Shown here piece after piece: positions 29,811-52,779 of a stretch of DNA of 64,000 nucleotides. The stretch comes from Antechinus flavipes (Eukaryota). The translations under genes were made by a program, and so were the position numbers. Below the pieces are notes generated by a model. It saw only the letters and a program-made list of their open reading frames with translations, had not been told where the DNA came from and searched no databases. The stretch lies in the NCBI RefSeq assembly GCF_016432865.1, contig NC_067402.1, positions 219,666,001-219,730,000 of the forward strand, in the 5' to 3' direction. Within the stretch, counting starts at the first letter, position 1. Every line of letters starts with the position of its first letter.

Positions 29811-31807
29811 ACTCGTTGGATTAAATAGGAGTATCAGTGTAGCAAGGCTACAAAGATAGGGATGATATAAAAGGATTGCAACATTCATAAAAAGTGAAGA
29901 AATTAGGCCTAAGTTTCACAATAGTTAATCAATCTAGGATATTTTCTCAGTGAGTCCACATTTCTCTGTGGAGTTCTAAGTGAAGGCTTATGCATAATTT
30001 GGGGGATCAGCCAATTTTTCCATATCTTGTGATTGGATATATCTATATCTATATCTATATCTATATATCTTGTAAGCATTTATGGCTTCCAATCATAGAC
30101 CTGGTTTTATGCTTAAAAGTTTCTATATACCAATCAAAAAAGACATTCTATGAGTTCTAATCTGTTTTGGATCCAAAGGATTTAAAGATTAATTGTTTTT
30201 ACCTCAAGGAATTTCTTAGTGGGTTCATCTCATGTGTACTACAGTGACCCTCATCCAGAAACTTTAAAGTCTGTAGAAAATAAATGTTAAAGGTAACATA
30301 TTGTTATAAAGGAAAACTGTTGTATTCCTTTATGAGGTACTAGAATTTAATGTAATTTACTCTTCCCTATCTCATTCACTAGGGAGATATAGAAAAGCTT
30401 ATTCAAAGCATGTCGTGATACCTACCCACTGCAATTGGTGTCTTGGCTAACTAAAACCATATGTAACTTTCTCAATTGAGGAATTTGCCTCATACTTCAC
30501 TGAAAAGTTAAGGCTATTCATTGAGAGCTCCCTCTTCTCCCTTTCTCATCTCAGATGATGTTTCTCTCCCTGAGGCAGCTTCCATATGCCTCTTTTAGAA
30601 AAACCCTGAAGTTCTCACCAGATCAAATAATGACCAAGATATCCCATGAGGAATTATAATTCTCCCCAAATTTGCTCTAGAAGTCAGGAAGGAGGCAATG
30701 GGAAAGGGGGATTACCAGCAAAAACAATACCTGTACAGATAAACAAGCAGGCCCAGAAGATCTGAGATTCTCCCTAGTCTTAGAATACATCTACAATCTT
30801 TTTTGCCATTACAACTACTCTGTGAGTCTAGAGTCTCTCTAAGTATATCCAACATCTGGTCTACTTTGGTCCAAGGTCTTTGTCATTGAATCTTGGATTT
30901 TTGTCATTAGGTCAGAAACATCAGTCTGAGTCCTCAGTGAATACAAGTTTTTTTTAGTTCAGTCTCCTTTTAGGCTAGAGGACATTTATGACTTCCTTAA
31001 TGGGTCTGTGGAGGTTGTCTTCCTAGTCAGGATTTGAAATCTAGTCTTCTGGTTTCTTATTGAATCTTGCCTTGGATCTAAGGGGTCTCTGTCCATGAAC
31101 TGACATCTTTCCCCACTTGTGGCAGGTATCTCTCTGGGCATATAGTATTTCTTCCTAACTGGAAATATCTGGGGACTTTCTCCAGGAATTTGTCTTTCCT
31201 GGTCTGGGCATTCGGTGAGTACTACATACTTCTCTGTGTGGCCCCTGGGATTCTGGACCTCTCTTCTCCACCCGAGTCTGAGAACCCTGGGAATCTGAAG
31301 TCTCTCTGAGTGGGTTCAGGATTTCTGTCATTATCTCCTATGGGAGTCTCCCTGTCACATCAGAATTGATCTTCAGATCTCAGCCACAATGTACCATACT
31401 TCGGATTCCAAGAGAGCTGACATTGCTGTTGGAACTAGAAGGGGATCCTTGGCTTTGTGACCTCCTAGAATGTGCTTGAATGGTGATAGAAATGTGTGGA
31501 GCTGTTAATGTTTCTGGAACTGTTATCGTTTCCCTGTCTGTTTTGGGAAGTCTAGGTGCTCCCACTAATCTTTCTCTACTTTTGCCTCTTTATGACTTTG
31601 ACAGAAGCAGGGGAAAGGGAAATTGGGGATTCAACTATCACACAGTAGAGGATGATATGCAATTTCTTGGCTAAAAAAATCAATGAATAACATTTTTAAG
31701 TGACTATGATGTGCCAGGCATTGTGTTAAATGCTTTGTACAAATAAAAGGCAAGAAACAGTTCTTATTTTCAAGGAGCTTACAATCTAATAAGGGAGGAA
31801 ACATGCA

Positions 31808-31812
<5 letters not shown>

Positions 31813-31876
<64 letters not shown>
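31813..31876. repeat. (AT)n microsatellite, expanded in block B only
   Basis: ~32 AT units vs about 4 at 20024-20031 in block A. Confidence 0.9.
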
Positions 31877-31880
<4 letters not shown>

Positions 31881-32646
31881 CAAGCAATATACAGGATAAA
31901 TAGGAAGGAATCAACAAGATGAAAGCACTTCTTGTAGAGGTTGGAATTTTAGTTGGAACAAAGAAGATCACTACTCAGAGCAGGTTAAGAAGAGTATTCA
32001 GGGCTTGGGGAACAGTCAGAGAGAATTCTGGGAAAAACAACAACTTCCTAGCTTTGTCTTTCTATGGATAGATGTCATTCCAATATCTGGTTCACACTTC
32101 AGGTATTTTTATGCTTTCCACAAGGGCATAAAAGAGGAGAAAAATATCCATAACAAGAGAAAAAAGAAACTTTTTTTTTTCTTTCAGTAGTGGGTAATAT
32201 CTGGAGCACCGTATTTGAGAGCAATAAAGTTTTTGGAGTTGAATTGAATTGATTAGCTCCACTTTTCAGCAGATTAGTATCCAATCACAACCAGGATGGT
32301 TGGGAAATCCTCTGTGTCAAGGTGGTAATATGATGGACTGAGGAGAGGGCTTAATTACTCCCTCTTTCTCACCCCCATCCTTGTATAGGTGGGGGCTATT
32401 CTTTCTTAGTTCTTTCTTTTTTTTTTGTCTCCTATTTGAAACACACTTAGTAATTCAATGGCAAACAATCTTTTCTTAGAGAAATCAGTTTATTTTAAAC
32501 ACAAAAGCAAACTGTAAAGAAAGAACTCTTTTACAAAAAATAACTACAATACATTTTATTTATTCTAAAATAAAAACAAATATAAATCCACACTGTTCAC
32601 ATTTCTTTTCTTGGTATCCAATAAAGCATAGGTTTAAATTGCTTAA

Positions 32647-33933
32647 ATGTTTCCAACTTTCTCATATATTAATAGTGTTACTCAGTTACTTAGAGTAGCA
32701 ATACATTATTATCTTCATTCCTCCTTTAAAGTTGCCTTTGCTAAAGATTGTAATTTTTTAGATGACCATTCTGTATACTCTCATGATTTAACCATAAAAA
32801 GAGTAGTCAGAACTCCTTTTCAGTCCACTCAGCAGAACGAATTATATGCGATCATGCTAGCTCTCACTTATTACCCAGGCAACATAAATATAATATCTGA
32901 TTCAGCCTATTCAGTAGGTGTGGTACAAAGAATTGCCACAGCCCAAATAAAATTTGCAGCTTCTAATATATATCAGCTCTTTAAGGAACTTCAAGAGCAA
33001 GTGAGAAAGCATCCAGGAAAGATTTATATCCTGCATGTCCACTCACATAGTGGACTTCCAGGTCCTATTTTTGATGGAAATTCAAAGGCAGATAGCCTTT
33101 TAACTATGTTGGCCAATACGCCTTTATTTCAGGAGGCTCAGGAATCCCATTCTAAATACCATCAGGCTGCTCGAGCTTTGCGTTTACAGTTTGGGATTAC
33201 AAAAGAAGAAGCTAGGAGCATAGTGAAAAGCTGTACAGCTTGCCTTCCCTTCCACGCTCCTACACTGCCTCCAGGGAAGAACCCTCGTGGTTTGAGACCC
33301 AATGAAATCTGGCAAATGGATGTGACCCATTATAAATCTTTTGGTCGTCTGTCTTTTATCCACGTTGTGGTAGACACCTTTTCAGGATTCACTTTTGCCA
33401 TACCAGCAGCAAAAGAGACAGCCCGAGTGGTCACTGAATTCCTCATTCAAGCATTCGCAATTATGGGTGTGCCACAAGAAATAAAAACAGATAATGAACC
33501 GGCATATACCTCCAAACATTTTGAACACTTTTGTGCACAGTATAAGATTTTACACACTACTGGCATACCCTTTAATCCTCAAGGTCAAGCAATAGTAGAA
33601 AGAAGAAACAGGGACATTAAGACACTCCTCCAAAAACAAAAGATAGGGGGAGCCACGGGTAACCCTAGAGAACTTCTAAATTTAGTTCTCTATACCATTA
33701 ATTTTTTAATCTTTGATAAAGATGCACTGGCTCCAGCAGACAGGTTTTATAACCCACCAGAAGAGCAGTGTCCAGTGCGAGCAGCTCCACTATCTTTAGA
33801 TAATCGCCAGGTGATGTGGAGAGACCCAGAAAGTGGTGAATGGAAGGGACCAGATAGGCTAACTGCTATGATCCACTGTGCTGATCAATCCCATATGCAT
33901 TACATAGTATTTAACAGTGACATGCTATCTTAG
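32647..33933 (+). CDS. 428-aa chimeric ORF: 42 host-derived codons + ERV RNaseH/integrase + ~21 host-derived codons; expression unknown
   Basis: ORF track; ATG 32647 in weak Kozak context; no promoter or transcript evidence visible. Confidence 0.3.
   Translation: MFPTFSYINSVTQLLRVAIHYYLHSSFKVAFAKDCNFLDDHSVYSHDLTIKRVVRTPFQSTQQNELYAIMLALTYYPGNINIISDSAYSVGVVQRIATAQIKFAASNIYQLFKELQEQVRKHPGKIYILHVHSHSGLPGPIFDGNSKADSLLTMLANTPLFQEAQESHSKYHQAARALRLQFGITKEEARSIVKSCTACLPFHAPTLPPGKNPRGLRPNEIWQMDVTHYKSFGRLSFIHVVVDTFSGFTFAIPAAKETARVVTEFLIQAFAIMGVPQEIKTDNEPAYTSKHFEHFCAQYKILHTTGIPFNPQGQAIVERRNRDIKTLLQKQKIGGATGNPRELLNLVLYTINFLIFDKDALAPADRFYNPPEEQCPVRAAPLSLDNRQVMWRDPESGEWKGPDRLTAMIHCADQSHMHYIVFNSDMLS
32773..33867 (+). 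mobile_element. LTR-less class II ERV pol fragment: C-terminal RNase H + nearly complete integrase
   Basis: QQNEL, IISDSAY, HVHSH, GNSKADSL (RNase H); HSKYH...CTAC zinc finger; WQMDVTH, IKTDN, AIVERRN (D-D-E); VMWRDP..WKGP; no stops or frameshifts; absent at the paralogous site in A (20917/20918). Confidence 0.9.
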
Positions 33934-35911
33934 TTGACAATCTCCATTTCAATCATCACCTATTTCTTTGATTTTTTTTCTTTCTCCTTCCATTTTCTTT
34001 TTCTTCTTTTGTTCCAGATGAACCTGAAGAGAATGTCCTCATATGGGATTTATTTTAGCAATGAGTTATTCCTTCTGATTAAGATTTCAGATTTTTCATG
34101 TTAATTATACTGCTTTTTTTATATCTGGCAAATGTTTCAAGGTCTTTGTCAAAATTTTAACATTGTTGAAAGGTAACCTTAGAAATAGCTAAGGTTACTT
34201 TGCTGAACTACATCTCTTTGTCAGTTGATAGAGTAAGACAACAGTGCAGTGAATTGCACTCTGACATTCAGGGTGAATGAGACTAGCTGCTTATCCTCTT
34301 CTTTGTCTTTATCCTTGTTCTCATCTTCCTCCTTCACTTTCTCCTGCTTCTTTTCCTGCTCCCCTTTTTGCTCCATGGTAGCAGAGGCAACTACATATTC
34401 CTGAAAAGAACTCTTAAGAGACAAAGACAGGAAACCCAGTTTCTTCCAGAGAGAAGAAAATTATCAGATCTGTCCTTAACATCAGGAACAATTTCAGATT
34501 CTACATTTTTCTGTGTTTCCTGCACTATAGAGTTAGGATTATTAGGACTATTATTATTTTAGTATCTTAGCTTTTACCTCCTTGACAATTTGCTGGCAGT
34601 GGTGGTGGCTGTAGCAAGAAGGTCCCAGCACTACTGCTGCTGGAGGTATCCTCCCTTCCCTGTTGTCCTAAATTCTGTTCCTTTTACTCTCAGGTAGCCA
34701 GAGAGCCAGCTTATGGTGGAATGGTGACTATGATTATCTTCAGATTCTATCATAGCTGTTATATACCATCTGTCTGCCAGGCCCATTGACAGCTTGTTTT
34801 GCATGAAATTAAAAAAAATACTCAGTTCACATTCTTAAAAGTAATGTGGGGTTGTGGCTAGATAAGAAAACTTGCTTATCAATCAAATTCTGGCTGCTTT
34901 GGTCTGTGTGTTAACTACTTAAAGGCCGAAGGGAGGAAAAGTAGGTAATTTCCATCTTGAACAGAGGCTATGCATCTTCAGAATCCATGTCTCTTTAGCA
35001 TTCTGTAAGAATATCTACCTTAGACTCACTGGATAACATTTCAATGTGTTATTTGCCTCTTTCTGGACCTTTCTGGACCTGTTTCTCTTCAGACTTGAGA
35101 CATTCCCTCAATCCCCTAATCCTTTTGGCGGAGTTGAGGTGACAGAAATGAGACTGAGCTATCTCTTGACAGATCTCTATACCTGCATTTTAGGGAGCTC
35201 GGGGAGTAGAAGGAGCTGGGTAGTCACTTCTCTTTAGGAAGGTCAAGGACCAAGGACAAACTTCTCTTCTCTCTTCCTTCTTTCCTCTAGATTATAGTCT
35301 GATTTCCGATGATGAGTCCCCATGGGATAGTAAGCCAGGGAACCACATGAGAATGACTGCTAGCAGTTATTGCCTCTAACAGAAGCTCTGAGAGGGACAC
35401 CCATAGGGATCATATCTGAAGCTTAAAGTTTCCCCTATTATTTCTCCTTTTCTTGTGTGTCTCACTCCTGTTTCTTTTTTTAAAACTCTCTCCTTGCTCC
35501 TCTTTCTCCTCTCCTCTTTCCACTCTCTCTCCCTCCTTTTCTTTTCTCTTTTCCCCCCTTCTCATAAAATTTTTCTATGTCTGCCTGTATGTGTTCCCAT
35601 TTTTAAGTTTAATGCTGAAAGACTGAAGTTTTTGACGCTAGAACCCAGGGTTTTATGAGATGGAAGGGACTCATATTGATATTGTATACAGCTAGATCCC
35701 ATTTTACTTTTGATGTCAAAAAATCATTTATGTTATAGTTTTCTCAGAGAGGACATTCTAATGCTTATTCATCACAATCTCCACACTTGGGATGTTCTTG
35801 TCTTCTCTAATCTGGATCTCTTTTGCTGCAGCAGTTTATCTACTTCTTTCTCTTCTTTGGGATTATTAACAATTTTTCTTTGGTCCTGTGCCCAGATGCA
35901 GATTTAGGGAC

Positions 35912-36841
35912 ATGGATGATGATAATGGGACAGCAGTGATCGAGTTCATTTTGTTGGGATTCTCAGATTTGGGCATTTACCAGAGTGCTCTCTTTTGGGG
36001 AGTGCTCTTTGTCTACTTGGTCACCTTGCTGGGTAACTCCTTGATCATTACACTTACCCTGTTGGATCCAGTCCTGAACACTCCCATGTACTTCTTCCTT
36101 CGACATCTCTCTATGATAGAGATTCTCTACACTATGACTATTGTACCCAGGATGCTGACTGATCTGCTTTTCTCCCATCCTGCCATCTCTCCTGCCAGCT
36201 GCTTCACCCAAATGTATTTCTTTGCCCTCTTTGGCATTGCCGAATGCTGTGTGCTCACTGCCATGGCCTATGACCGTTATGCTGCCATTTGTCGGCCCCT
36301 GCACTATGCCATGCTGATGAACCGGCAGGCATGTGTGGGTATGGTAGGTGCTTCTTATTTAATAGGCATCATTACAAGCACTACCCACTCCATACTCATC
36401 TTTACCTTGCCCTTCCATGGCACTAACATTGTTCACCACTTCCTATGTGACGTTTTACCTGTTTTGAGACTGGCAAGTGGAGACACATTCTGGGGTGAGG
36501 TTGGGAACCTTGTTGTCACCCTCCTCTTTATCATTACTCCCTTTGCATTGGTTTTGTTTTCCTATGTTTGCATCCTCATTACCATCCTTGGGGTTGCCTC
36601 TGCTCAGGGACGCCAAAAAGTCTTCTCTACTTGCTCTTCCCACCTATTGGTAGTCACACTTTTCTTTGGGACTGCAAGTTTAACCTACATGAAACCGGGA
36701 ACCAATGATACTAAGGACACAGATCAAGTTCTCTCCCTTTTTTACACAGTTGTAACTCCCATGCTCAATCCTTTTATCTATACTCTGAGGAACAAGGAGG
36801 TGATGGGAGCCCTGAGGCGTAAATTAACAAAACACCTTTGA
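35912..36841 (+). CDS. OR10P1: Olfactory receptor, family 10, OR10P1-like, copy B, intact (309 aa)
   Basis: Full 7TM OR motif set: N-glycosylation [60 protein letters not shown]; resembles human OR10P1 from memory (symbol is best-match, not proven orthology); true start is ATG 35912, not the GTG at 35888. Confidence 0.9.
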   Translation: MDDDNGTAVIEFILLGFSDLGIYQSALFWGVLFVYLVTLLGNSLIITLTLLDPVLNTPMYFFLRHLSMIEILYTMTIVPRMLTDLLFSHPAISPASCFTQMYFFALFGIAECCVLTAMAYDRYAAICRPLHYAMLMNRQACVGMVGASYLIGIITSTTHSILIFTLPFHGTNIVHHFLCDVLPVLRLASGDTFWGEVGNLVVTLLFIITPFALVLFSYVCILITILGVASAQGRQKVFSTCSSHLLVVTLFFGTASLTYMKPGTNDTKDTDQVLSLFYTVVTPMLNPFIYTLRNKEVMGALRRKLTKHL

Positions 36842-39515
36842 AGTCCTTGCATGATCCAGATTTGCTTGGCTTCCTTTTTGGTGAGTTGAGAGTTGTTCCC
36901 TGATTTTTATTTTTTTCTTTTAATTTTATATTTTTAAACTATCAAACATTTGTTTTTCCACATACCCCCCCTCCCCGCCTTGCATTAAAGGAAAAAAGAA
37001 AAGCAAAATCCTTGCTATTATATAAGTTAAGAAATTCCTTTTTCAATTTTGCCCAGAAATGTCTCATGCTGCATATTTAGTGTTCTTCATCATCATGACC
37101 TGATCTTTGTAAAAGGAGGAAATCCCTAGACCTTTTGCTTGTAGGGGGATTCCTGGAGATTTTTAATTAAGATGCACTTGGTCTTTCAGAAAGACATCCT
37201 ATCTTTTCTGAAGGTTCCAGGAATTTAATATATTTTCATCTGAGATACTGACCTGGTATCTGTTTTCAGGTTTGTGCATTAAGTGGAGGCTGGGTGAGCA
37301 CATTTGGAGGGATGTTCAGGTATGGATTAGACGACATGGATTAGGAAGTTAGTGTTTGAAGGAAATAAATACTGGGAAATCTTCAAGTATAAAGTAGTTG
37401 GGGTGGAGGAGGCTGTGAGCTGGACCTCCTTAAGTTTACTTTTAACATTGAGATTTTATATTTTTGGGGGTTTATTATATATATTAATATAAGTATGTGC
37501 TGAGTCTAGTACTGCAGTTTGAGAGGGATTCACATGGATTAAGGGACATAGATGTGAATGATTTTGTGTGATTATGACACACCTCAGGATTTGGGACCCT
37601 TCCCCTTCCTCTGTAGTAAGTCATTCCATTGGTTATGTTCAGTACCAGTAACTACTTTAGTGGTAAGAACTATCAGAGAATAAGTCTATAAAAGTTTGGG
37701 CAGGGAATATTCAGATCATTTTAACGAATATTAAGTGCTTACTATATGCAAGGTTACTTTTACAAGACACAAATGTAACAGGTCCTCCTTTAAGGAACTT
37801 AGATTCTACTGGAGGAATGATCTAAATTAGATGTCTAGTTTAGATCACCCTTGCTTATAGCTGCTTTTGTCTCCAGTATCTGTTCACCACTTATCCTCAT
37901 CTTAGGCTAAGCTCTTCCCAAGATCCTTTTGGAATCATTAACTCCACCAGGTTCTGAGTCCTACTTTAATCTTAGATGGATGTACAGCATATTTTAAAAT
38001 CTCTTGTTTCTGGAATCAGCAGATCTGACCTAGCCTCTATATCTAACTTACTTTGCCGTATCTAAATATGCCATTCTATAGAGATCCTGGTGGTGATTTA
38101 CTGACCCTTCAGATCATTTGTGAGGCTCACAGACATCTTTTCTTTTTGGAGAAATTGGGGTTAAGTGACTTATCATACAGCTAGTAATTGTTTGAATCCA
38201 CAATTTGAAATCAAGTCCTCTAGACTGCTAGACTATTGTGCCACCCAGTGGACCCTTTAGGGGGATTTCAATATACATGTTTATATCCCTTAAACACAAC
38301 TGGCTTCCCATTTCACTGTTTCCTCTATGACCCTGATCTTTACCTTTTCTCCATCTCTTTTTCTCTTACACACATAGAGGGTAGTTACTTGTCCTTTGAT
38401 ATCTTTAATCTCATCATCACTAACATGTATTCTACCTGTACAATCCAGAAATTGTTACATGCCATTAACCTTTTCCGTTTGTATCTCTTATTGTCTCACA
38501 CCCCTTCTGAAGCTATTCTTTGTTTTCAGGGCAGTTCTCAAGTCATTTCAATCTTCATTGCTCTTTTAGTATATCACTGTTGTCCTGGCTTTGGGATATC
38601 ACTTCACAGACTTGAAGATTATTTAATTTTATGTTGTCTACCCTTAACTCTCTTGCATCCTTATCTTATCAACACTTATGCCCTTTTAAGTATCAGGTTT
38701 GGATTTTCCCCACCACCTACCTCCACTCCATCTCACTTATGGGTGAAGTCACAGAACCCTGCTACAAATTTGGCAGCTAAATGTAGTGGATAGAACTCTG
38801 GGCCAGGAATCAGCAAGATCTGAATTCAGATGTGACCTCAGATATTTATTAGCTGAATGACTCAGATCAAATCACTTTACCTCTGTTTCAGGCTCCTTAT
38901 GTGTAAGGTTTATATTAGCACCTACCTCAATGTTATTATGAGATAATAGTTATAAAGTGAATAGCATAGTTCCTAGCACATAATAAGCACTATGTAAATG
39001 TTTATTATTATTATTATGTCTTAGCTGGATCCTATGGCTGCCTAGTAATCTTTACTCTTCCCTGATTGACTGGTGCACTTTTTATTTGGAACCTTTTATT
39101 TCTTCAAGTCATTGATATCACCCTGCCCTCTCCTTCTAAGCAGATTTTGTTTCATATTCTACCAATAAAAGACTATTTTTGCGATCTCCCTTTCATTTCC
39201 AATCCTACATCTCAAGTACCCTTAACAACATTTCATTCTTTCTTGCAATCTCAGGGACAAAGCTAACTACTGATCACATCCCCTGCAAACTCACATGGGA
39301 GCTTGTACTTTTTAATTATACTATCTTTCTAATCTCCAATTTCTTTTTATCCAGTTTACTTCCTTGATGCATGCAAAGATGCTTAGATCTCCCTTAAAAA
39401 ACAAAACAAAACAACTTACTGTGGTATTAAAAAAAACAAACTATCACACTACGCGTCTTCTGCCTTTGATGAATTCCTTAGGGGGGAAAAAACCCTGTAT
39501 TTTCGCACAGCTTCA

Positions 39516-39549
39516 TTTTTTTTTTTTTTTAAAGAAACAAACTTTTATT
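39516..39549 (-). other. Poly(A) signal and genomically encoded poly(A) tail of the retrocopy
   Basis: tttatt at 39544-39549 (+), T15 at 39516-39530, 13 nt apart. Confidence 0.85.
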
Positions 39550-39668
39550 TCTGTGATTTTTACATTGCAATTTGTGTTTGACAAAAAAATAAAATCTCTG
39601 CAAAAAAAAAAAAGAAACCCCAAACCCCAAAACAAAACCCTCTCCACTTTCCAGCTACTGAGCTGATA

Positions 39669-40535
39669 TCAATAGCGTCTGTTCATTTTCTTAAACTTCT
39701 CATAGTGATAATCATCAGTTGCTTTTTCGTTGGGGGGGCGCTTGCGATTCGGGGGTGACCTCTCGGCTTCCGGCTTCTCAGTATCTCCCACCCTGAGGGG
39801 TCGGGTTTTTGGCTCTTCCTTGTGCCTGCGAACTGGGGCATGGAGCTCTTCATGATAAAATCGGTTGTGCTGCACGTAGTTCACAGCCATGTTCGTGGGA
39901 ACAAAAGAGGTTTCGCTGTCTTTCTTTTTGTTCCGTTGCTCAGCCAGCAGACGGGCTTTGGCATCCTCGGTCGAAATGATATTTTTTATTTTTGCCTCAA
40001 TGCCTAAATCCACTTCGGGGATGCCGCTCAGCATTTGGTTGGACAGCATCTCCTCCGTTTTTTTGGCGGACGAGACTCGGATGCTCTCGGGGAGCTCGTA
40101 GAGACAGTCTTCCGCATTCTTCAGCTTTACTTTCTGCTCCTCGTTTTCCACAATTCCTTTCCTCTTCTTTAGTTCTGTCTCAATGTACTTCATCATGTCG
40201 GCGTCTTCATCCCTTCGGTTGGTTTCGGCCGAAAATGATGTTCCTAAATTGAGATCCTCCTCTTCGCTAATTCTGTCCTTGTTTCTTTCCTTAAGTTTCT
40301 TCATGTCCACCATTCCACCGGTTTTGACCTGAAAGGGATCGTCTACCAGGGCTGTCTCTTCCTGTACTTTCTCCCCAACCAGGAGGGCTACTGCACTCAC
40401 CCCATTGGGTCGTCTCCTCAAGCTCTGAACTTCTTTGGTTTCCTCCAGTTTCAACCGGACCTCCTCACTGTCCTGGTCGTCCGACTCCGACTCCGAGTCG
40501 GCACGGCGCCTGCGGAAGGTCTTGCCCGCCCGCAT
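39669..40535 (-). CDS. C9orf78: Intronless retrogene of C9orf78 / TLS1 homolog (spliceosome-associated protein), 288 aa, intact
   Basis: FRRRR..DSEEVRLKLEET..NGVSAVALLVGEKVQEE..SAETNRRDEDADMMKYIETELKKRKG..SETSFVPTNMAVNYVQHNRF..KATDDYHYEKFKKMNRRY, about 90% like human C9orf78 from memory; no introns; AATAAA at 39549-39544 and A15 at 39530-39516 on minus strand. Confidence 0.93.
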   Translation of the reverse strand: MRAGKTFRRRRADSESESDDQDSEEVRLKLEETKEVQSLRRRPNGVSAVALLVGEKVQEETALVDDPFQVKTGGMVDMKKLKERNKDRISEEEDLNLGTSFSAETNRRDEDADMMKYIETELKKRKGIVENEEQKVKLKNAEDCLYELPESIRVSSAKKTEEMLSNQMLSGIPEVDLGIEAKIKNIISTEDAKARLLAEQRNKKKDSETSFVPTNMAVNYVQHNRFYHEELHAPVRRHKEEPKTRPLRVGDTEKPEAERSPPNRKRPPNEKATDDYHYEKFKKMNRRY

Positions 40536-41460
40536 GATTCCCCGCGCTCGGGATTCCCTCAGGGACCGCAGCAGGGAACCCTCCCGCGGCTCTCCGACCA
40601 GGGCCCCGGTCCTAGGTCCGAACAGGGGCTGGGAACTAGTTCCGGCGCAGGCAAGTGAGGTCAGAAGGGCGCGCAGCGGCCCGTCCTGGGGGTGTGCTCT
40701 CGTGGGGTAGTGCGCTCCCGCCTGCCCGTCCCAGACTGGGAAAGGCGGCGAGAGGGTAAGGGGGCGGGAGGAGTCCTGTAGCTCGGCCTCGCGGAAGCTC
40801 CGCCCATAGCCCATCTAGGCGAACGTGGCCGGGCCGCTTCAGCTCTGGGACCGAATAGGGAGGCGCCCGTCCGTGTACTTCGCAAACTTTCAATCTGTCG
40901 TTTGTCCGTTCTGGAAGAGGACCGTGACGTCGGGGAGCGATGCCATGACATGCGAGCGAATTGGATTTAAGAGAGGGAGGGCTGTGCAAAGTCATCTGCT
41001 TCACTTTCTCCTCCAGAGCCATCTGGGTCCAGCGGCCCCATATAGATCAAGACGACTGGAGATGGCCCTCAATGAAATGGGAGAACTTTGTCTTTTTAAG
41101 TTAAGGTCTTCAACAGGTCTCCCTTTGGCTGAGGCGGCCCCATTCAGTGATTAAAGCTGGTAGCAATCTGGGCAAAGAAGCTCCTCTTCCGTCTAGTCTC
41201 CTCGCCTCCCACAATCTAAAAAAATAAATGAATGAATGAATGAATTAACAAACAAACAAATAAATAAATCTCGGAAGGAAAGACCCTCAGGGTTTCTGGC
41301 CAAAGCCGAAATAACTGCTATTTACATTCAAACTGAAACTGCTTTCTCCAAGGTACCGAGTGTGGATCGCTGAGTCCAAATCTTAGTCTTCATCTTTCTT
41401 GCTCTCTCTGCAGCTCTGGATACAGCGGACTACGACCTCCTGCACATTCTCCTCGAGAAT
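40480..41460. promoter_or_regulatory. CpG island / probable promoter of the retrogene
   Basis: Only long GC- and CpG-rich stretch in an AT-rich window; GC box GGGCGG 40762-40767, ETS cores TTCCGG 40640-40645 and CGGAAG 40792-40797, CRE-like TGACGTCG 40925-40932. Confidence 0.75.
40893..41270 (+). mobile_element. RTE-associated marsupial SINE with A-rich tail, CpG-rich copy
   Basis: Same element as 9905-10052 (-) and 57965-58330 (+); A-rich (AATG/AAAC/AAAT)n tail at ~41217-41270. Confidence 0.65.
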
Positions 41461-42461
41461 AGACAACTTCTGGATATTTCTTCTACCTAGAAAGCTGGTC
41501 CTCTTCCCGAATGAAGGACAACCAACTTAGAAATTTGCTGCTTCTTAGTCTCTTTGTTGTATCATCATTCATCTCTCTCTCCTATGAATGGATATACCTC
41601 CAGCATCTGACCCAGGTCTTTTCTCTTTTTTTCCCCTTAAGGCAATTGCGATTAAATGATTTGCCCAGGATCATATTGTCCCAGGTCTTCTTTCCCTTTT
41701 CTAAACTCTTTTTTTGGGGTGATCTCATAACTCCTGAAAGATTAAGGATCATCTCTAGTTAGACGATTCTTCCTCCTGCTATGTGAGACTTGCATTTGAA
41801 TGCCTCAGAGGCATCCCATAGTCAACAATTCCAAAACAATTCATTTTTCTATTTCTTCTAAGCCAAATTTTCTTCTATTTTTGTTGAGAATACCTTCATC
41901 TTTCTAGGTTTAAAGCCTTTTACTCCTTGTGACATATCAATCAATCACCTAGGTTTGGTGATTCTGTCTCCAAGATAGTATCCATGACTATCTTTTCACT
42001 TCCTTGATCATTACTCTAATTGAGGCTTTCTTCACCTTTTTTGGTGGGCTATTGCATTGCTTATCTAATTAGTAACAATAATAATATTAACAAATAATAA
42101 TTATTTAACTTGCTTCCTTGTTTTCAGCCTCTTTCCTCATGAATCTATTTCTGAGGTACAGGTGTTTTTTTATTCTTTTTTGGTGGGCAATCAGAGTTAA
42201 GGGCAGGATCACACAACTATTAAGTGTCTGAGACATTATTTGAACTCAGATCCTTTTGACTCCAGGCTCAGTGTTCTAGCCATTGCACCATCTAGCTGTC
42301 CTGAGATACAGCTTTGAGCATGTTACTCCTCTGTTTAAAAACTTTTAGTGACGCCCTGTTATTTCTAAGATAAAAAACAAACTCATGTGTTTGGTATTTA
42401 AAGCCCTCGACAATATGGCTCCAGCCAGTTTTTCTAGACATTGCTCCCTATCATGAACTCT

Positions 42462-42618
42462 TTTTTTTTTTTTTTTTTAATTTTTGGTGAGGTAATTGGG
42501 GTCAAGTGACTTGCCCAGGTCACACAGCTAGGAAATGTTAGGTGTCTGAGACCAGATTTGAACTCAGGTCCTCCTGACTTCAGGGCTGGTGCTCTATCCA
42601 TTGTATCATTTAGCTGCT
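42462..42618 (-). mobile_element. WSINE1-type SINE with 15-bp TSD
   Basis: T-tail; ggggtcaagtgacttgcccagg..gtgtctgagaccagatttgaactcaggtcctcctgacttcagggctggtgctctatcca; TSD cctatcatgaactct at 42447-42461 and 42619-42633. Confidence 0.85.
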
Positions 42619-44869
42619 CCTATCATGAACTCTTATGTTCTAGTCAAATTGGAGTTATGACTATCTAGCCAAATATGAGAGTAAAGTCTTTACTTGCTAC
42701 TTCTTTAGAGGCTGTTTTCTTCATCTGGAGTATATTCTTTCTTCAATTCTGTCTCATACAATCCTTAGCTCTCTATGAAGATTAACTTGACTGTAATGAT
42801 ATCCTAAGTGAAACCTTTCCCAGATTCTGCCACCTCAATCCTCCCCATCAGACATTAACATTGTCCCCTTGAAATTACTTTCTATATCTGTTGTATTTAC
42901 TTAACTGTGCACATACTATTTTACCCGGGAAAAATGTAAGATCCTTAAGTTAGAGACTGTTTCAGTTTTGTTTTTATATCTATAATTCTTAACACAGTTG
43001 TTGCTACAGAGCAGCACTAAATAAACCTATTTTGATGCTTGACTTGGGATGACTTTGATTTTCTATCTAGAGGGTACCAAACACAACTCTGTCTCTTCTA
43101 GAATGGTCAGGTCTTCTTGATGGTGACTTGGAACATGTAGTTTCAGTTGTCAGCATATGTGTACAGTCATTAATCCTAGAGCTAGAAAAGGTAACCAGAT
43201 GACCAGAGTAATATTGCCCACATATGCAGGCACTTTTGTCATTTTGTTCAGGTCAAGGAGATATGTTGTGTGATGATGACAATTATTTGATTAGAGAAAG
43301 GTCATGGGCATCTACAATTTGCTAGGCACATGCTTACAGATATTGTCTGGAGGAATACTGAACTGTGAATAGCTCTTAAGGCTCAGAAAGGAGGTCATGT
43401 GGAAGACAAGACTTCTTTGTCATTTCCTTCTGCTTTGGATTGAATACTATGGATGTAGCAGGAAGAATGATAACTAAAAGCAGTGAAGAACTTTATGATA
43501 AAAAAATTAATCCCCTTCACAAGCAAAATGCATTTCAACTTTCCAGACATTACTTATTTCACTTTTTATTTCTACTATATTCTATTAAAATTGATTGTTC
43601 CCCACAAATGTCATTCCATTTCCCAGCTCTGATTTTGCTCAAAGTATATTCTATACTGGAATGCACTTTGTCCTCATATCCATCTCTTAGAATTCTTAGC
43701 TTCCTTCAAAACTCAGTTTAATCTCCTACAGCATCCCTTTCCTGATCTTCCCAATTGCTAGTGCATTTTCCCTGACCTACCAAGTTATTTTTGTGCAGGT
43801 TGATTGGTTGCTGTCTTTTGTTCTTGAAGAGGATAGAAATGCCATTTCTATTTTGGAGTCAAGGTACTGTTTCCAACTGTGACTGATTAGATTAATATGA
43901 GTGTGAAAGTTACCCAGGATGGGCACAAATTGTACATAAGAATATTGAAAGTAGAGCTTCTGCCACATTTTCTGACATGTAGTAAGTACTTAATAATTGC
44001 TTGTTGTTCCAGGTGAGATGGCCATGTAAACAGTGCAGAGGACCTAACTCTTCTACCTTTATTTCAGCAATGATTTATTTAACAAGAGCACCAGATCAAG
44101 CAACACCTCTCAAATCCAAAGTGATCCTTCAGGAAGCTAATTCATCCCATTCAGGCTGAAAAAAAAGATGGCCAGAAGCTAAGAGCCCTGGAAGAGGAAA
44201 CAGTCCAAAAGTTCTCATCTCAGAGAAGTCCCAAAAGCTTCCTGACTGGAAAAACTCCAGCAATAGTGAAGCAGTAGTATGAACAGAATTATTCCCAGAG
44301 GGTACAGAAGAGGCAGGATCCTGATCTTAGAAGCCTCAGAGGGGAGAGAAGACTATCTATTGTCTTGATTAGGGACCATCACGCACAGAGCTCTGACCTC
44401 ATGGTAAAAAAAAAAAATTAATGGTCTTAAGAAAAAAGGAAGAAAAGGGGAAATGTATTAAGGAAAAAATGACAAAGGGGATGAACTATCTTGCATAGTC
44501 AGTGAATGTGTGATAAAGGGTGTATAAATATAAGGGAAGGGATGATTCAGTATGATATAAATCTCACTTTCATCTGAACTGAACAAAAAGGTTTAACACA
44601 ATTTCACACACATAGTCACACAGATTTTTGGTACACAAATATATTAACCCTCAAAAGGGAAATAGGGATAACAGGGAAGGAGGATAGTTTAGAAGGAGGA
44701 TAGGGATGGTATAAAGAAAACAAATTTTAGGGTGGCTATGATAGATCATGAATGGGAGATTAAGAGGAAAGAAAGAATAAGAACTTGAGACCGAGACTAG
44801 ATAAGGAGAAGAGAAGAGGAACAGTGGGGCAAAGAAATCACTTTTGGTATAGATCACTAAATGTTAAAC

Positions 44870-45319
44870 TTTTTTTTTTTTTTTACCATCACCTTTGTTT
44901 TTTTTTTTTTTAAGTTTATTTTTTTATTATAGCTTTTTATTTACAAGATATAAGCATAGGTAATTTTTCAGCATTGACAGTTGCAAATCCTTTTGTTCCA
45001 ACTTTTTCCCTCCTTCCCCCCATCCCCTCCCCCAGAGGGCAGGTTGACCAATACAAGTTAAATATGTTAAAGTATAAATTAAATACGATATATGTATACA
45101 TGTCCAAACAGTTATTTTGCTGTATAAAAAGAGTTGGACTTTGAAATAGTGTACAATTAGCCTGTGAAAGAAATAAAAAATGCAGGTGGACAAAATAGAG
45201 GGATTGGGAATTCTATGTAGTGATTCATAGTCATCTCCCAGAGTTCTTTTCCTGGGGGTAGCTGGTTCAGTTCATTACTGCTCTATTGGAACTGATTTGG
45301 TTCATCTTCATTGTTGAAG
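44870..45319 (-). mobile_element. L1 3' end truncating the 5' LTR of the adjacent ERV
   Basis: T-tails 44870-44925; marsupial L1 3'UTR. Confidence 0.8.
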
Positions 45320-48300
45320 CATTGATTTGTGATCATAAGCTGAGAGTCACAGCCAGTGGTTGTGTGAACTGGGATGCCTGAACAGGACTTCTTGCTTGTG
45401 AGCGAGCTGCTGAATTGCTGGATTGTCGCTCCTCCCATTAGTGATACCATGCATACACAATGCCTATGAGTTACTTCTCTGAATGGTGATTGGGCTGATC
45501 AGGCTTGCAAAAATGTATATCAACAAGGCTGTACAGCATAATAAACTGGAACTCTGTTCATCTGTCTGCCAGATCTCTTTGGAGATTGTATGGGGTGTCC
45601 TGGCAAGAAGCTGCAAGCATAGTAAAAAGGTGTAGCTTGTATACCATATTCTCAAAAACCTGTAGGGTTGGGGACTAACTCCAGAGGTGATAGGCCAAAT
45701 GATATATGGCAAATGAATATTACACATATAGGAAAAACATGCATTCATGCTACAGTTGACACTTATTCAGGCTTTGTATCTCATCCTCTCAATGAAGGGA
45801 AGCCGTTTCACATGTAATAAATCACCATTTCACTGTTTTGCCTCTATGGGTATCCCACACATCATTAAGATTGATAATGGACCCTCATGTACCTTAAAAA
45901 TATTAAAATAGTTCTTACAGGAATTCTCCATACATCATATTTTTGGGATTCCTTACAACCCTACAGGACAGGCCATTGTAGAAAGAACTAATCAGACCCT
46001 CAAGAGATAGGATTACTAAGAAAAAATATAGATAATAAGTATATAATATATAAATGATATGATATGATATAAATATAGACACAATAAATTACTTAAACAT
46101 TTGATTCAAATGATTTAAGTCCAGCTATGAAATACTCTCTGGTGAAAATAGACAGAGAATCACTCAAAGATTACACCCATCGTCATTAAGAAGGCCCCCT
46201 AAGAACGAGACTATGGTAATGAAAAAGGTTTTTGAAGGATGGGAGGGACTTTATAGGGTTCTAATGTGGTGGCCAGGATATACTTGTATCTCCACAGGAG
46301 AAAACCTTCAGCAGACACCTCAAAGTTGTCCATAGAACTGAAGAAAAAAAAAGGAAGAAGAGGCAACTGTCCAAAAGGAGGAGATGTGCCCCCAATTCCA
46401 CTAGCAAGATGCTTTCTATATATATGGGTTTATGTTACATACAATCAGCATTGGCAACAGAGACCAAAAGGTCATGATGGACCCACCATGGCCTAGGATT
46501 GTATCATGGGGGGAATGCATACCGATGCACTGCTAACAGGAAATGCATCCCAAATAATCAGGGATGAATTTCACTTTGAGAAATATAATGGAACTATGGT
46601 AAAAGGGAAGTACAACTTTGCTGAACTTGCTAATAGGCTTCCTTTGTGCTGGTCAGGAAGGAATAGTACCTACTGTGCACAAGTGAAAAACACGACTTTA
46701 CAAATGCCAGCTTCAGGTATGGGGTATCACGTGGCACACACTCTGGGCCATGTCAGAGCGACCCCTTCATCCCCGTGGGAGGGCTGCTGAGGTGTGTCTA
46801 CATATAGCGGTCATCAGGCTGGCCCCTCATATCTGCAGGCCGTGCCCATACTTGTACTTGTTATACGATTGCAAACTGGACATTACAAGCGTGGCATGAG
46901 GCCAAAAAGATGACTATGACGGTCTCCCAGGACCTGTTTGGGAACCTTACAAAAGCAATGCCTGGAAAGGTTTATGGAAAACACAAGCCTCCATGGGACA
47001 CATTCTTGCCCCTCAACAAATGGGCCTGCAGTTGGCACATGGAAAAACACCTCGGGCCCTGGTTCTTGGACAAATGGCCCCAGAATTGGATACCAGTTCT
47101 ATACTCAAGCCTGTCTGGGAGGGAAATACGCATTTTTGTGGGGAGACTCTGTAATGTTACCAAAGAAACTTTACAATGTTACTTGTTGGAATTGGACATT
47201 TAGTGATTGCTTGGATACTGAAATTGAAAATCAGATGGTATTTGTGATCACTAGAGCTTATGTATCAATGCTTCCTGTCAAAAGTGAGAAAGAGTATCGT
47301 GCTAGGACTGATCATATGTTCAATAGCATAATAGAAAAGAAGGAAACAGACCTTAGTCCCTCTAGAAAAAAGAGATGTATCAGCTGTGTCATATTAGATA
47401 TTTCTATGTAGGTTTCACTTACAGTTTCATCGGTCTCTCTTGCAATGTCCATATCTAATGTACAAAACAGCCTAGTACAAGCTAGATACATAGAGGAACT
47501 AGCCAGGAATGTCTCAGTGGGTTTTGCTCAACAAGCTGAGAGTGATGAACAATTGTATCAGATGACAAAAGGTTTAAGAGAAGTATCATTGGAAATAGGA
47601 GCAGAAGTGGAGTTATTGAGACTCCAGGCTCCATTACAATGTGATTACAGATATACAAAGGTTGTGTAACCCCTTTGCTGTATAATCATATAGGTCAAGA
47701 TTATGATTGGGAGGCATTTGAAAGGTTTATTTCTCAATAACACAATTGAAGGTGAAATAGAAAGTTTATATAAATTAGCATCTGATATAGAGAAAGCTTC
47801 TCATGAAGATTTGAATCCAGATAAAACTGCTGAAAAAATCATACATTGGTTTGATAATACCTCTTCATGGTGGTTAAAATTAGACTCATCGATTGCCCTG
47901 TGTGTTGTTATGTTGTTCCTACTTTGTTGATACCCTGTAATATTAGGATGTTTTTATAGAGCTTTCTCCACCATCCTTTCAGAGGTTGCAGCTCAAGAAA
48001 GGGCTTTTTAATCTAAAAGATAAAAAGGGGGAATTACTGAATTATGGAATCCTGCAGAAAGGGAGTACTGAAGTCACCTTTGATGCACAGTAAGTTTTCT
48101 GCCATGTTGCAGAAACCACGGTGCAGAAATGCCCTTGTTAAGCAAGAAACATTGATTTGTGATTGTGGGAATGAATATAAGCTGAGGGTCACAGCCAGTA
48201 GCTACCTGAACAGGAATGCCTAAACAGGGCATCTGGCCTGTGAGCAAGCTGCTGAATTGCTGGATTGGCTCTTCTCCCATTGGTAGATGCCTTGCATACA

Positions 48301-52049: not shown

Positions 52050-52760
52050 ACAATCATCAAAACAATAATAGCAATAGCTTATCAAATTGAGAAATAAAAC
52101 CAGGAGCTAGAATTCTGAATGAAACAAACCAAATAGCTGGTGGATTTGACTATAAATGAACAAGAGGACAATTTAATTGTCAGCATCAAAACTGGAAAAA
52201 GAGAACTCAAAAGAAATGAAGATGAAATAAAGAAATTCTAAAAAAATTTTTAGCCAATCATATGGCAACAAAACTGTTAATGTTAATGAAAGTGTTGAAT
52301 TTGTACAAAAATACAAAAGATTCAGATTAATTGGACAAAAATTAGAGAATCTGAATTACCTAACAAATTAGTCATAAATGAACTCTCATTGCCCAGGACA
52401 AAATAGATTTATAAGTGAACTTATGAAACATTCAAGGAACAATTCATTCCAATATTACTTAAACTGTTTATAAAAATAAGAGAAGAATGAATCACATGAG
52501 ACTCCTTTTATGATACAAATATTGGCTTGATATCTAAACCAGAAATGTACCCCTATCCCCCAAAAGAAAACAATGGTCCATTATCTTTAATGGATAGCAA
52601 ACCAAAAATATTAAGTGATATATTAGCAATGAGGTTACAGCAATAAATAAATAAATTATAAACTATGTTCAGGTTGTATATTCAATATATGTAAAACTAT
52701 CAATACAGCAATGTTAATAATGAAAAATAATAAAATGATATAATTTTATTAATATAAGCT
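52050..52760 (+). mobile_element. Degraded L1 ORF2 (RT-region) fragment
   Basis: ggtccattatctttaatggatagc..aaaatattaagtgatatattagcaatgagg resembles YRPISLMN.D.KIL.KILA. Confidence 0.55.
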
Positions 52761-52779
52761 GTTTTTTGACTGATCTCTG

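What the first reader, a model, noticed from the sequence alone, without database searches (positions are those of the whole stretch)
39496..40892. Intact, apparently old C9orf78 retrogene inside an olfactory receptor cluster (candidate functional or parent-replacing gene)
Seen: intronless 288-aa ORF with no disabling change, AATAAA + A15, inserted within an ancient L2; a possible degraded TSD tgtattttcgcacagcttca (39496-39515) / tgtacttcgcaaactttca (40874-40892), about 15/20 matches; CpG-rich synonymous positions through the CDS although the surrounding DNA is AT-rich. Known: eutherian C9orf78 is a multi-exon spliceosome-associated gene. Inference: decayed TSD plus a highly conserved protein implies long purifying selection, so this is probably an expressed retrogene, perhaps the only functional copy in this lineage, in normally silent OR chromatin.
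Basis: partly seen in the sequence, partly recalled or inferred. Interest (0 to 1): 0.78.

Follow-up and report, generated by a model that had tools for sequence, protein, structure and literature searches.

The report
Old, selected C9orf78 retrogene in dasyurids
An intronless copy of the splicing-factor gene C9orf78 sits among smell-receptor genes in the yellow-footed antechinus and at the same place in the Tasmanian devil; it encodes an identical protein in both, so it is a working extra gene kept by selection beside its intact parent, not a dead copy and not a replacement.

Summary
Window 39669-40535 (minus strand) is an intact 288-aa Hep_59/C9orf78 ORF with no introns. It has an AATAAA signal and an A15 tail placed where the parent's 3'UTR homology ends.

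The window is Antechinus flavipes (an identical locus was fetched). The Tasmanian devil carries the same copy at the collinear locus, next to the same olfactory receptor gene.

- **Selection:** neutral flanks differ by about 8%. The CDS differs at 17 sites, all synonymous (dN 0, dS 0.10; P about 1e-9 under neutrality).
- **Age:** against the devil's own 9-exon parent, dS is 0.72-0.77 and dN/dS about 0.05. That is at least as deep as the opossum-devil parental divergence, so the copy is tens of millions of years old.
- **Methylation proxy:** the whole copy is a CpG island (o/e 0.6-1.0) in DNA with o/e about 0.1.
- **Expression:** k-mer holdings in 18 small runs from 8 studies (3 recorded as RNA) suggest transcription.

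"Only functional copy" is not supported, because the parent is intact in the devil. The TSD is not above chance and the L2 claim was not testable.

This is a new member of a known kind.

The parts
39669..40535 (-). Retrogene coding sequence: 288 codons plus stop, a full-length C9orf78/TLS1 (Hep_59) protein.
   Evidence: ORF and translation. Pfam PF07052 at E 7.9e-29. Aligns end to end with human C9orf78 chains 8c6j/7os2. The devil orthologue L001:10001-10867 encodes the identical protein, with 17 synonymous differences.
39531..39668 (-). 3'UTR inherited from the parent mRNA, including the poly(A) signal AATAAA at 39544-39549.
   Evidence: Aligns with the devil parent 3'UTR up to the cleavage site. 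It is 97% identical between antechinus and devil, against 91.6% in the flanks (binomial P 0.01). AATAAA is kept in window, devil and L004.
39516..39530 (-). Poly(A) tail remnant (A15; T15 on the + strand).
   Evidence: Read directly. It lies where parental homology ends, while the parent continues into unrelated genomic DNA.
40536..40680 (-). Proximal 5' leader homologous to the parent's exon-1 upstream region. It contains a 40-nt block (40639-40678) identical in antechinus and devil and recognisable in the devil and opossum parents (it holds GCCGGAAC).
   Evidence: Alignments. It is 95.1% identical between species.
40681..40873 (-). Distal GC-rich 5' region (GC 0.66-0.71, CpG o/e 0.8-0.9). 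Its origin is undecided: either a long parental leader or a locally evolved CpG island.
   Evidence: No significant similarity to parental upstream DNA. The GC drop at about 40880-40900 fits an insert boundary. The opossum parent transcript contig L005 carries a 395-nt leader, so a long parental leader is possible.
39496..39515 (.). Proposed target-site duplication, 3' copy.
   Evidence: Best local match to 40871-40892, about 15 of 20 with one gap. It is not significant: 361 of 2000 shuffles score as high.
40874..40892 (.). Proposed target-site duplication, 5' copy.
   Evidence: Same test as for the 3' copy.
39700..41100 (.). CpG island covering the gene body and 5' region. It fades upstream to about 41500 in antechinus.
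   Evidence: CpG o/e in 200-bp windows is 0.58-1.06, against 0.0-0.3 outside. The same pattern is seen at devil L001:9600-10800. The whole window has o/e 0.137.
35888..36841 (+). Neighbouring intact olfactory receptor gene (317 aa), used as the synteny anchor.
   Evidence: ORF. The devil orthologue lies at L001:13755-14702 with 93.7% amino-acid identity.

Best explanation
This is a functional, protein-coding retrogene of the spliceosome factor C9orf78 (TLS1/HCA59).

Origin (shown): a spliced, polyadenylated parental mRNA was reverse-transcribed and inserted into an olfactory-receptor cluster long before antechinus and devil split. By synonymous distance the insertion dates to around the early marsupial or Australidelphian radiation.

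Selection (shown): the copy has since been kept by strong purifying selection on the protein, alongside an intact multi-exon parent on another chromosome.

Mechanism (inferred): it is transcribed from a germline-unmethylated CpG-island promoter at its own 5' end. This promoter was at least partly carried over from the parent's leader or core promoter. The product is a full-length C9orf78 paralogue that should bind the BRR2 helicase through the conserved F-R motif and the R41/R43/N45 region, and so modulate alternative splicing as the parent does.

Unknown: which tissues use it, and why two copies are kept.
For: Retroposition:
- The copy has no introns, against 9 parental coding exons.
- The A15 tail sits at the parental cleavage site.
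- Retrocopy and parent lie on different chromosomes of one devil assembly.

Orthology:
- The window is identical to Antechinus flavipes GCA_016432865.2.
- The devil locus is collinear on both sides at 90-93% identity, with the same OR neighbour.

Selection:
- 17 of 17 CDS differences are synonymous, giving dN 0 and dS 0.099. P is 4e-12 to 1.5e-9 under neutral models with ts/tv and CpG bias.
- From the inferred ancestor the retro lineage has 58-64 synonymous and 10 nonsynonymous codon changes.
- dN/dS against the parents is 0.03-0.05.

Age:
- dS to its own parent is 0.72-0.77, against 0.58 for the opossum-devil parents.

Function-bearing residues:
- The equivalents of human F8, R9, R41, R43 and N45, which contact BRR2 (PMC8894380), are all kept.

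Expression proxies:
- CpG o/e is 0.6-1.0 across the copy in two species, in a background of about 0.1.
- The 3'UTR and the poly(A) signal are conserved.
- 18 small runs of organism A from 8 studies, 3 on record as RNA, hold 0.37-0.39 of the words. The ceiling for a devil copy is 0.36, and the parent would give 0.011.
- One transcriptome-sized run of the window's own species holds 0.75 of the words.
Against: - Transcription, strand, TSS and tissue are therefore not shown.
- Most holder runs are only guessed to be RNA.
- No Logan contig with a full-length gene call for the 288-aa protein was on record.
- There is no protein-level evidence.
- The origin of the promoter is unresolved: the distal 5' region is not demonstrably parental and the TSD is not significant.
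- Dating is loose. GC3 shifted from 0.51 to 0.615 on the retro lineage, and the key tree nodes have only 33-83% support.
Confidence: 0.85

Rival explanations
1. A young processed pseudogene that merely has not yet picked up a disabling mutation.
For: It has no introns and has a poly(A) tail. C9orf78 throws off retrocopies readily: there is an independent one in Dromiciops, and '-like' copies appear in other vertebrates.
Against: - The CDS is only about 87.5% identical to the parent in the same lineage, with dS 0.72-0.77.
- It is present at the orthologous site in two dasyurid tribes.
- It shows 0 of 17 nonsynonymous changes.
- Its CpG has not decayed, despite a background o/e of 0.1.
Confidence: 0.01
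2. An orphan or parent-replacing retrogene: the intron-containing gene is dead or dying in dasyurids and this copy carries the function.
For: - The devil parent has 12 lineage-specific substitutions plus one codon deletion, against 1 lineage-specific substitution in the wallaby parent (Tajima-type test P 0.002). They include N45K at a BRR2 contact.
- The retro protein has 10 changes and keeps N45.
- The CpG-island promoter is of the type reported for orphan retrogenes (PMC4772013).
Against: - The devil parent has 9 exons with GT/AG (or GC) splice sites that translate exactly to the annotated 287-aa protein.
- Its dN/dS against opossum is 0.045.
Confidence: 0.07
3. The DNA is conserved for a non-coding reason, such as a CpG-island insulator or enhancer of the OR cluster or a regulatory RNA, and the open frame is incidental.
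For: - The island sits in an OR cluster.
- The 3'UTR is more conserved than the flanks.
- In antechinus the island extends beyond the copy.
Against: Conservation is codon-periodic. All 17 differences between species fall at third positions and are synonymous. The whole-history ratio of nonsynonymous to synonymous codon changes is about 0.16, against about 3 expected under neutrality. DNA-level constraint does not produce that pattern.
Confidence: 0.04

Closest known systems
Human/vertebrate C9orf78 (TLS1, HCA59), a BRR2-binding spliceosome factor (PDB 7os2, 8c6j; PMC8894380)
   Same: Same length class and Hep_59 domain. About 91% identical, aligning over residues 5-288. The BRR2-contact residues (human F8, R9, R41, R43, N45) are all present.
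   Different: It has no introns, lies at a new locus in an OR cluster, and is a lineage-restricted second copy. It carries ten derived residues: K9R, E20D, T62A, K69Q, I70V, N90S, D180E, Q201R, N232H and P257A. BRR2 binding was not tested.
Selectively preserved mammalian retrogenes with CpG-island promoters (Carelli et al. 2016, PMC4772013), e.g. HAPSTR2 (PMC9834230)
   Same: An mRNA-derived duplicate of a housekeeping nuclear factor, with an intact ORF, low dN/dS and a CpG island at its 5' end. It coexists with its parent.
   Different: It is marsupial-specific. The island spans the whole gene body and gained synonymous CpGs. Part of the parent's leader or core-promoter block came along, which that paper reports for only about 3% of expressed retrocopies. 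It may already sit unnamed in that paper's marsupial tables, which could not be read.
Intronless C9orf78 copy of Dromiciops gliroides (P0008; L006:10001-10849)
   Same: An intact ORF without introns, annotated as the TLS1 homologue. dN/dS against the opossum parent is 0.05.
   Different: It is an independent event.
- It continues along the parent's longer 3'UTR past the dasyurid cleavage site.
- Its 5' end starts about 30 nt further in.
- There is no OR gene within 10 kb, and the flanks are not alignable.
- It lacks the retro-specific residues and has a 6-codon deletion.
Ordinary processed pseudogenes
   Same: The same birth mechanism (poly(A) tail, loss of introns).
   Different: Its frame, CpGs, poly(A) signal and protein sequence have been preserved over a long time in two species.

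Membership tests
C9orf78/TLS1 (Pfam Hep_59) protein family | Significant match to PF07052 above the curated cut-off | tested here: met
   100.8 bits against a cut-off of 22.7, E 7.9e-29.
C9orf78/TLS1 (Pfam Hep_59) protein family | Full-length collinearity with experimentally studied C9orf78 | tested here: met
   Residues 5-288 align to 6-289 of PDB 8c6j chain CT, E 2e-166.
C9orf78/TLS1 (Pfam Hep_59) protein family | BRR2-contact residues F8, R9, R41, R43, N45 (human numbering) | tested here: met
   Present as F7, R8, R40, R42 and N44. The residue list comes from PMC8894380. Binding itself was not tested.
Processed (L1-type) retrocopy | Lacks all parental introns | tested here: met
   The CDS is contiguous. 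The devil parent has 9 coding exons with canonical GT(GC)/AG splice sites at L003:3001-7583.
Processed (L1-type) retrocopy | Poly(A) tract at the parental polyadenylation site | tested here: met
   The A15 tract begins where the parent 3'UTR alignment ends, and AATAAA lies 13 nt upstream.
Processed (L1-type) retrocopy | Target-site duplication flanking the insert | tested here: inconclusive
No empty site was recoverable: the paralogous block ends at 39503/25794.
Processed (L1-type) retrocopy | Located away from the parent | tested here: met
   In the devil, the retro copy is on CM109178.1 and the parent on CM109175.1 of the same assembly.
Functional retrogene | Intact ORF in orthologues of more than one species | tested here: met
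   Antechinus and devil carry it. The probable third orthologue L004 is also open.
Functional retrogene | dN/dS well below 1 between retro orthologues | tested here: met
   dN 0, dS 0.099; P(17 of 17 synonymous) is at most 1.5e-9.
Functional retrogene | Transcribed | tested here: inconclusive
   Word holdings in 18 small runs from 8 studies (3 recorded as RNA) sit at the ceiling expected for the devil copy, and cannot be explained by the parent.
Functional retrogene | Translated into a stable protein | not testable with these tools
   No proteomic data are available here.
Orphan (parent-replacing) retrogene | Parent lost or disabled in the same genome | tested here: not met
   The devil parent is intact and spliceable to the 287-aa protein. 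A parent is noted in the antechinus genome.

The most novel reading that the evidence does not exclude
A hand-over between parent and retrogene is under way in dasyurids.
- The intronless copy carries part of the parental core promoter inside a germline-unmethylated island and has stayed closer to the ancestral protein, keeping BRR2-contact residue N45.
- The intron-containing parent has sped up about tenfold relative to the wallaby parent (12 substitutions against 1, plus N45K).
- On this reading the retrogene now carries much of the ancestral splicing role, and the parent is specialising or decaying.

A related possibility is that the insertion predates the Australidelphian radiation and was kept or lost repeatedly, with Dromiciops re-inventing it independently.
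Probability: 0.12. Interest if true: 0.6.

Novelty: new member of a known kind. Interest (0 to 1): 0.42.

Why it matters
It adds a clean, well-supported case of a core spliceosome regulator that was duplicated by retroposition and kept for tens of millions of years in marsupials.

Three features make it useful:
- The gene-wide CpG island stands out in CpG-depleted olfactory-receptor DNA. That makes it a natural marker of an active, unmethylated promoter inside otherwise silent chromatin.
- Both copies evolve faster than the wallaby and opossum parent genes, which may be single-copy (not checked). This offers a small test bed for how redundancy relaxes constraint on a BRR2 regulator.
- For annotation, the antechinus model of 381 aa is probably too long at the N-terminus. 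The extension is not conserved in the devil.

It does not overturn anything. Retrogenes of this kind number in the hundreds per mammal.

Tried and rejected
- **Read laying:** Nothing was laid. Those places were not sent to any search tool afterwards, and later scripts started at 39100.
- **Empty site from the window's own tandem OR blocks:** the paralogue of the 3' flank (24657-25794) stops at 39503, 12 bp before the A-run. It then runs into an L1-like insert and an N gap, so no pre-insertion site could be read.
- **Homology of the distal 5' region to parental upstream DNA:** not above dinucleotide shuffles.
- **TSD significance:** not above shuffles.
- **Same-event test for the Dromiciops copy:** rejected. 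The flanks are unrelated, the 3'UTR is longer, and there is no OR gene nearby.
- **Identity of run SRR17300728 (source of L004):** not found in the paper library.
- **Carelli et al. supplements:** no supplementary files are held.
- **DNA of the wallaby and opossum parent loci:** The opossum parent was taken from a spliced transcript contig, L005.
- **Upstream in-frame ATG at 40814 (381-aa ORF):** rejected as the conserved start, because the devil has an upstream stop.
- **Parent exons:** these were located exon by exon.
Full report
**What is in the sequence**

On the minus strand, 39669-40535 is an uninterrupted ORF of 288 codons plus a stop.
- It matches Pfam Hep_59 at 100.8 bits.
- It aligns over residues 5-288 with human C9orf78 in PDB 8c6j and 7os2.
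- On the + strand a T15 run occupies 39516-39530, and TTTATT (AATAAA on the gene strand) lies at 39544-39549.
- GC rises from about 0.35 in the surroundings to 0.64-0.71 at 40350-40950.

**Which genome, and is there an orthologue**

An exact-protein look-up of the longer in-frame ORF (381 aa, starting at the ATG at 40814) returned L009 from GCA_016432865.2. L009 is identical to window 34669-45814 with 0 mismatches. That accession is Antechinus flavipes (PMC11965985).

The 288-aa protein is also encoded, residue for residue, at L001:10001-10867 in GCA_048593225.1. That assembly carries the protein named Sarcophilus harrisii KAM9061584.1 on its 690-Mb contig.

L001 is collinear with the window on both sides of the gene at 90-93% identity. 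It has the orthologous olfactory receptor 2.9 kb beyond the 3' end, at 93.7% amino-acid identity. The copy therefore predates the antechinus-devil split.

**Retroposition**

The same devil assembly holds the parent on another chromosome (L003, CM109175.1). The retro CDS hits it in nine separate pieces. With GT(GC)/AG splice sites, the nine exons translate exactly to the annotated 287-aa protein P0129.

The retro 3'UTR follows the parental 3'UTR up to ...AAAGTTTGTTTCTTT. There the parent continues into unrelated DNA and the retrocopy turns into the A-run. Loss of introns, a tail at the parental cleavage site and a new chromosomal location together show an mRNA origin.

Exons were found one by one, and codons were compared only inside local scripts.

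**Boundaries**

The 5' leader is clearly parental for about 145 nt (40536-40680). It includes a 40-nt block (40639-40678, with GCCGGAAC) that is identical in antechinus and devil and recognisable in the devil and opossum parents.

Further upstream, 40681-40873 is GC-rich but not significantly similar to parental upstream DNA.

However, 18% of shuffles match as well.

Two findings leave a 338-nt parental leader ending at 40873 possible but unproven:
- the GC step at about 40880-40900;
- a 395-nt leader on the spliced opossum transcript contig L005.

An empty site could not be recovered from the window's own tandem OR blocks. The L2 claim could not be tested.

**Selection**

Between antechinus and devil the flanks differ at 8.4% of aligned sites. 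The CDS differs at 17 of 867 sites, the 3'UTR at 4 of 135 and the proximal leader at 7 of 144.

All 17 CDS differences are third-position and synonymous, giving dN 0 and dS 0.099. Under neutral mutation models with ts/tv of 1-4 and CpG hypermutability of 1-15x, the synonymous fraction is 0.21-0.30. The probability of 17 synonymous out of 17 is then 4e-12 to 1.5e-9.

From an ancestor inferred by codon majority, the retro lineage shows 58-64 synonymous and 10 nonsynonymous codon changes. Pairwise dN/dS against the parents is 0.03-0.05. The protein has been under strong constraint through the copy's whole history.

**Age**

| Comparison | dS |
|---|---|
| Retrogene vs devil's own parent | 0.72-0.77 |
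| Retrogene vs opossum parent | 0.64-0.67 |
| Opossum parent vs devil parent | 0.58 |

An ML tree places the antechinus and devil copies together (100%). They join L004 (60%) in an unresolved group with the devil parent and the Dromiciops copy (33%). That group lies inside Australidelphia (83%), with opossum and turtle outside.

The copy is thus many times older than the antechinus-devil split and roughly as old as the early marsupial or Australidelphian radiation. I do not give a date. GC3 rose from 0.51 to 0.615 on the retro lineage, which distorts synonymous distances.

**A probable third orthologue**

Logan contig L004 (run SRR17300728, organism unknown) carries an open 288-codon copy. Several lines link it to the retrogene:
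- It shares five derived residues with the retrogene: K9R, K69Q, D180E, N232H and P257A.
- It shares 12 nucleotide states with the retrogene against all parents. It shares 2 with the devil parent and 5 with Dromiciops.
- It has the same raised GC3.
- After a short A-run it has TGAAGC, the first six bases of the window's 3' flank.

It has 39 derived residues, and its ratio of nonsynonymous to synonymous codon changes is about 0.7. That is relaxed but still below neutral. If it is orthologous, the insertion is older than that species' split from dasyurids.

**CpG island**

In 200-bp windows, CpG o/e is 0.58-1.06 from 39700 to 41099 in antechinus and 0.57-0.91 at L001:9600-10799 in the devil. Outside it is 0.0-0.3, and the whole window stands at 0.137.

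The CDS holds 31-33 CpGs at codon positions 2-3 and 3-1, against 11-16 in the parents. Protein-level selection cannot protect such sites. The simplest reading is that the locus is unmethylated in the germline, as active CpG-island promoters are. This is an inference.

In antechinus the island fades into the upstream host DNA up to about 41500 (o/e 0.43-0.69). In the devil the extension is weaker.

**Expression**

| Runs | Share of sampled 31-mers of 39516-40873 |
|---|---|
| 18 small runs of one organism, 8 studies, 21-576 M letters, 3 recorded as RNA-Seq | 0.37-0.39 |
| Transcriptome-sized run (121 M letters) of the window's own organism | 0.75 |
| Whole-genome-sized runs of the window's own organism | 0.97 |

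The devil orthologue shares 0.36 of all the words, nearly all of them in the CDS. The devil parent shares 0.011. These runs therefore hold essentially the whole retro CDS and not the parent.

This points to widespread transcription, but it is indirect. Strand, transcript ends and expression level are therefore unknown. Those places were not sent to any search tool afterwards.

**Function and the parent**

C9ORF78 binds the C-terminal cassette of BRR2 through residues 5-58. F8, R9, R41, R43 and N45 are conserved contacts, and R41A abolishes binding and the splicing effects (PMC8894380). The retro protein keeps all five.

Opossum and wallaby parent proteins differ at only 4 positions. Against the state shared by those two parents:
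- the devil parent has 12 derived substitutions plus one codon deletion, including N45K;
- the retro protein has 10 derived substitutions;
- the wallaby parent has 1.

The Tajima-type test gives P 0.002 for the devil parent and P 0.007 for the retro protein. Both duplicates are faster than the opossum and wallaby parent genes (not checked for extra copies) yet still strongly constrained. That fits partial redundancy.

The parent is intact, and it is noted in the antechinus genome too. The 'only copy' idea is therefore not supported.

**Literature and novelty**

No paper in the library pairs C9orf78 with retrogene or retrocopy terms. Carelli et al. annotated devil retrocopies and report 52 marsupial-specific intact families. 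They also report that about 3% of expressed retrocopies inherit a parental promoter and that many use CpG islands. Their tables could not be read, so the copy may already be listed there without a name.

It is annotated by NCBI as 288 aa in the devil and 381 aa in antechinus. The extension is not conserved, because the devil has an upstream stop.

**Verdict**

This is a well-supported, old, selectively preserved retrogene that coexists with its parent. It is a new member of a known kind and of moderate interest.

Noticed in passing
L006:10001-10849 (Dromiciops gliroides, GCA_019393635.1 CM033370.1): An independent intronless C9orf78 copy with an open 282-aa frame, annotated as the TLS1 homologue. 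It extends along a longer parental 3'UTR, has a 6-codon deletion, has no OR gene within 10 kb, and shows dN/dS 0.05 against the opossum parent. Whether Dromiciops also keeps the multi-exon gene was not checked.
   Followed up: partly
window 16978-25794 and 30183-39503; also 52757-55969: Tandem paralogous OR blocks, about 89% identical for the first two and about 69-84% for the third. The right edge of the duplicated unit (39503/25794) lies only 12 bp from the retrogene's poly(A) tract. In the other copy it abuts an L1-like insert and an N gap. The devil's single block is closer to window block A (93.3%) than to block B (90.5%).
   Followed up: partly
L003:3001-7583 (devil parent) vs P0125/P0133: The dasyurid parent protein has 12 lineage-specific substitutions plus one codon deletion. 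The changes include N45K at a BRR2 contact, K69N, K71N, V129M and Q134L. Opossum and wallaby parents differ at only 4 sites in total.
   Followed up: partly
window 40536-40814 (minus strand): An in-frame upstream ATG at 40814 gives a 381-aa ORF, which is the product on record for the antechinus assembly. The devil has an upstream stop and only the 288-aa frame, so the N-terminal 93 residues are probably an annotation artefact.
   Followed up: yes
P0017 and P0019 (Tachyglossus aculeatus): The echidna has two C9orf78-like proteins (286 and 287 aa, 84-85% identical to the query) on different large contigs. One may be another retrogene. Trichechus inunguis and Zootoca vivipara also have '-like' copies.
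   Followed up: no
window 32647-33933 (+): A 428-aa ORF with a retroviral RNase H/integrase-like sequence, present in block B only. It was already noted by the scan as s1-220948.
   Followed up: no
window 39570-39603 (minus-strand 3'UTR): The dasyurid retro 3'UTR carries about 30 nt of T/G-rich sequence absent from the parent and from L004. This is a lineage-specific insertion inside an otherwise conserved UTR.
   Followed up: no
The places lie in the 3' flank, outside the retrogene.
   Followed up: no
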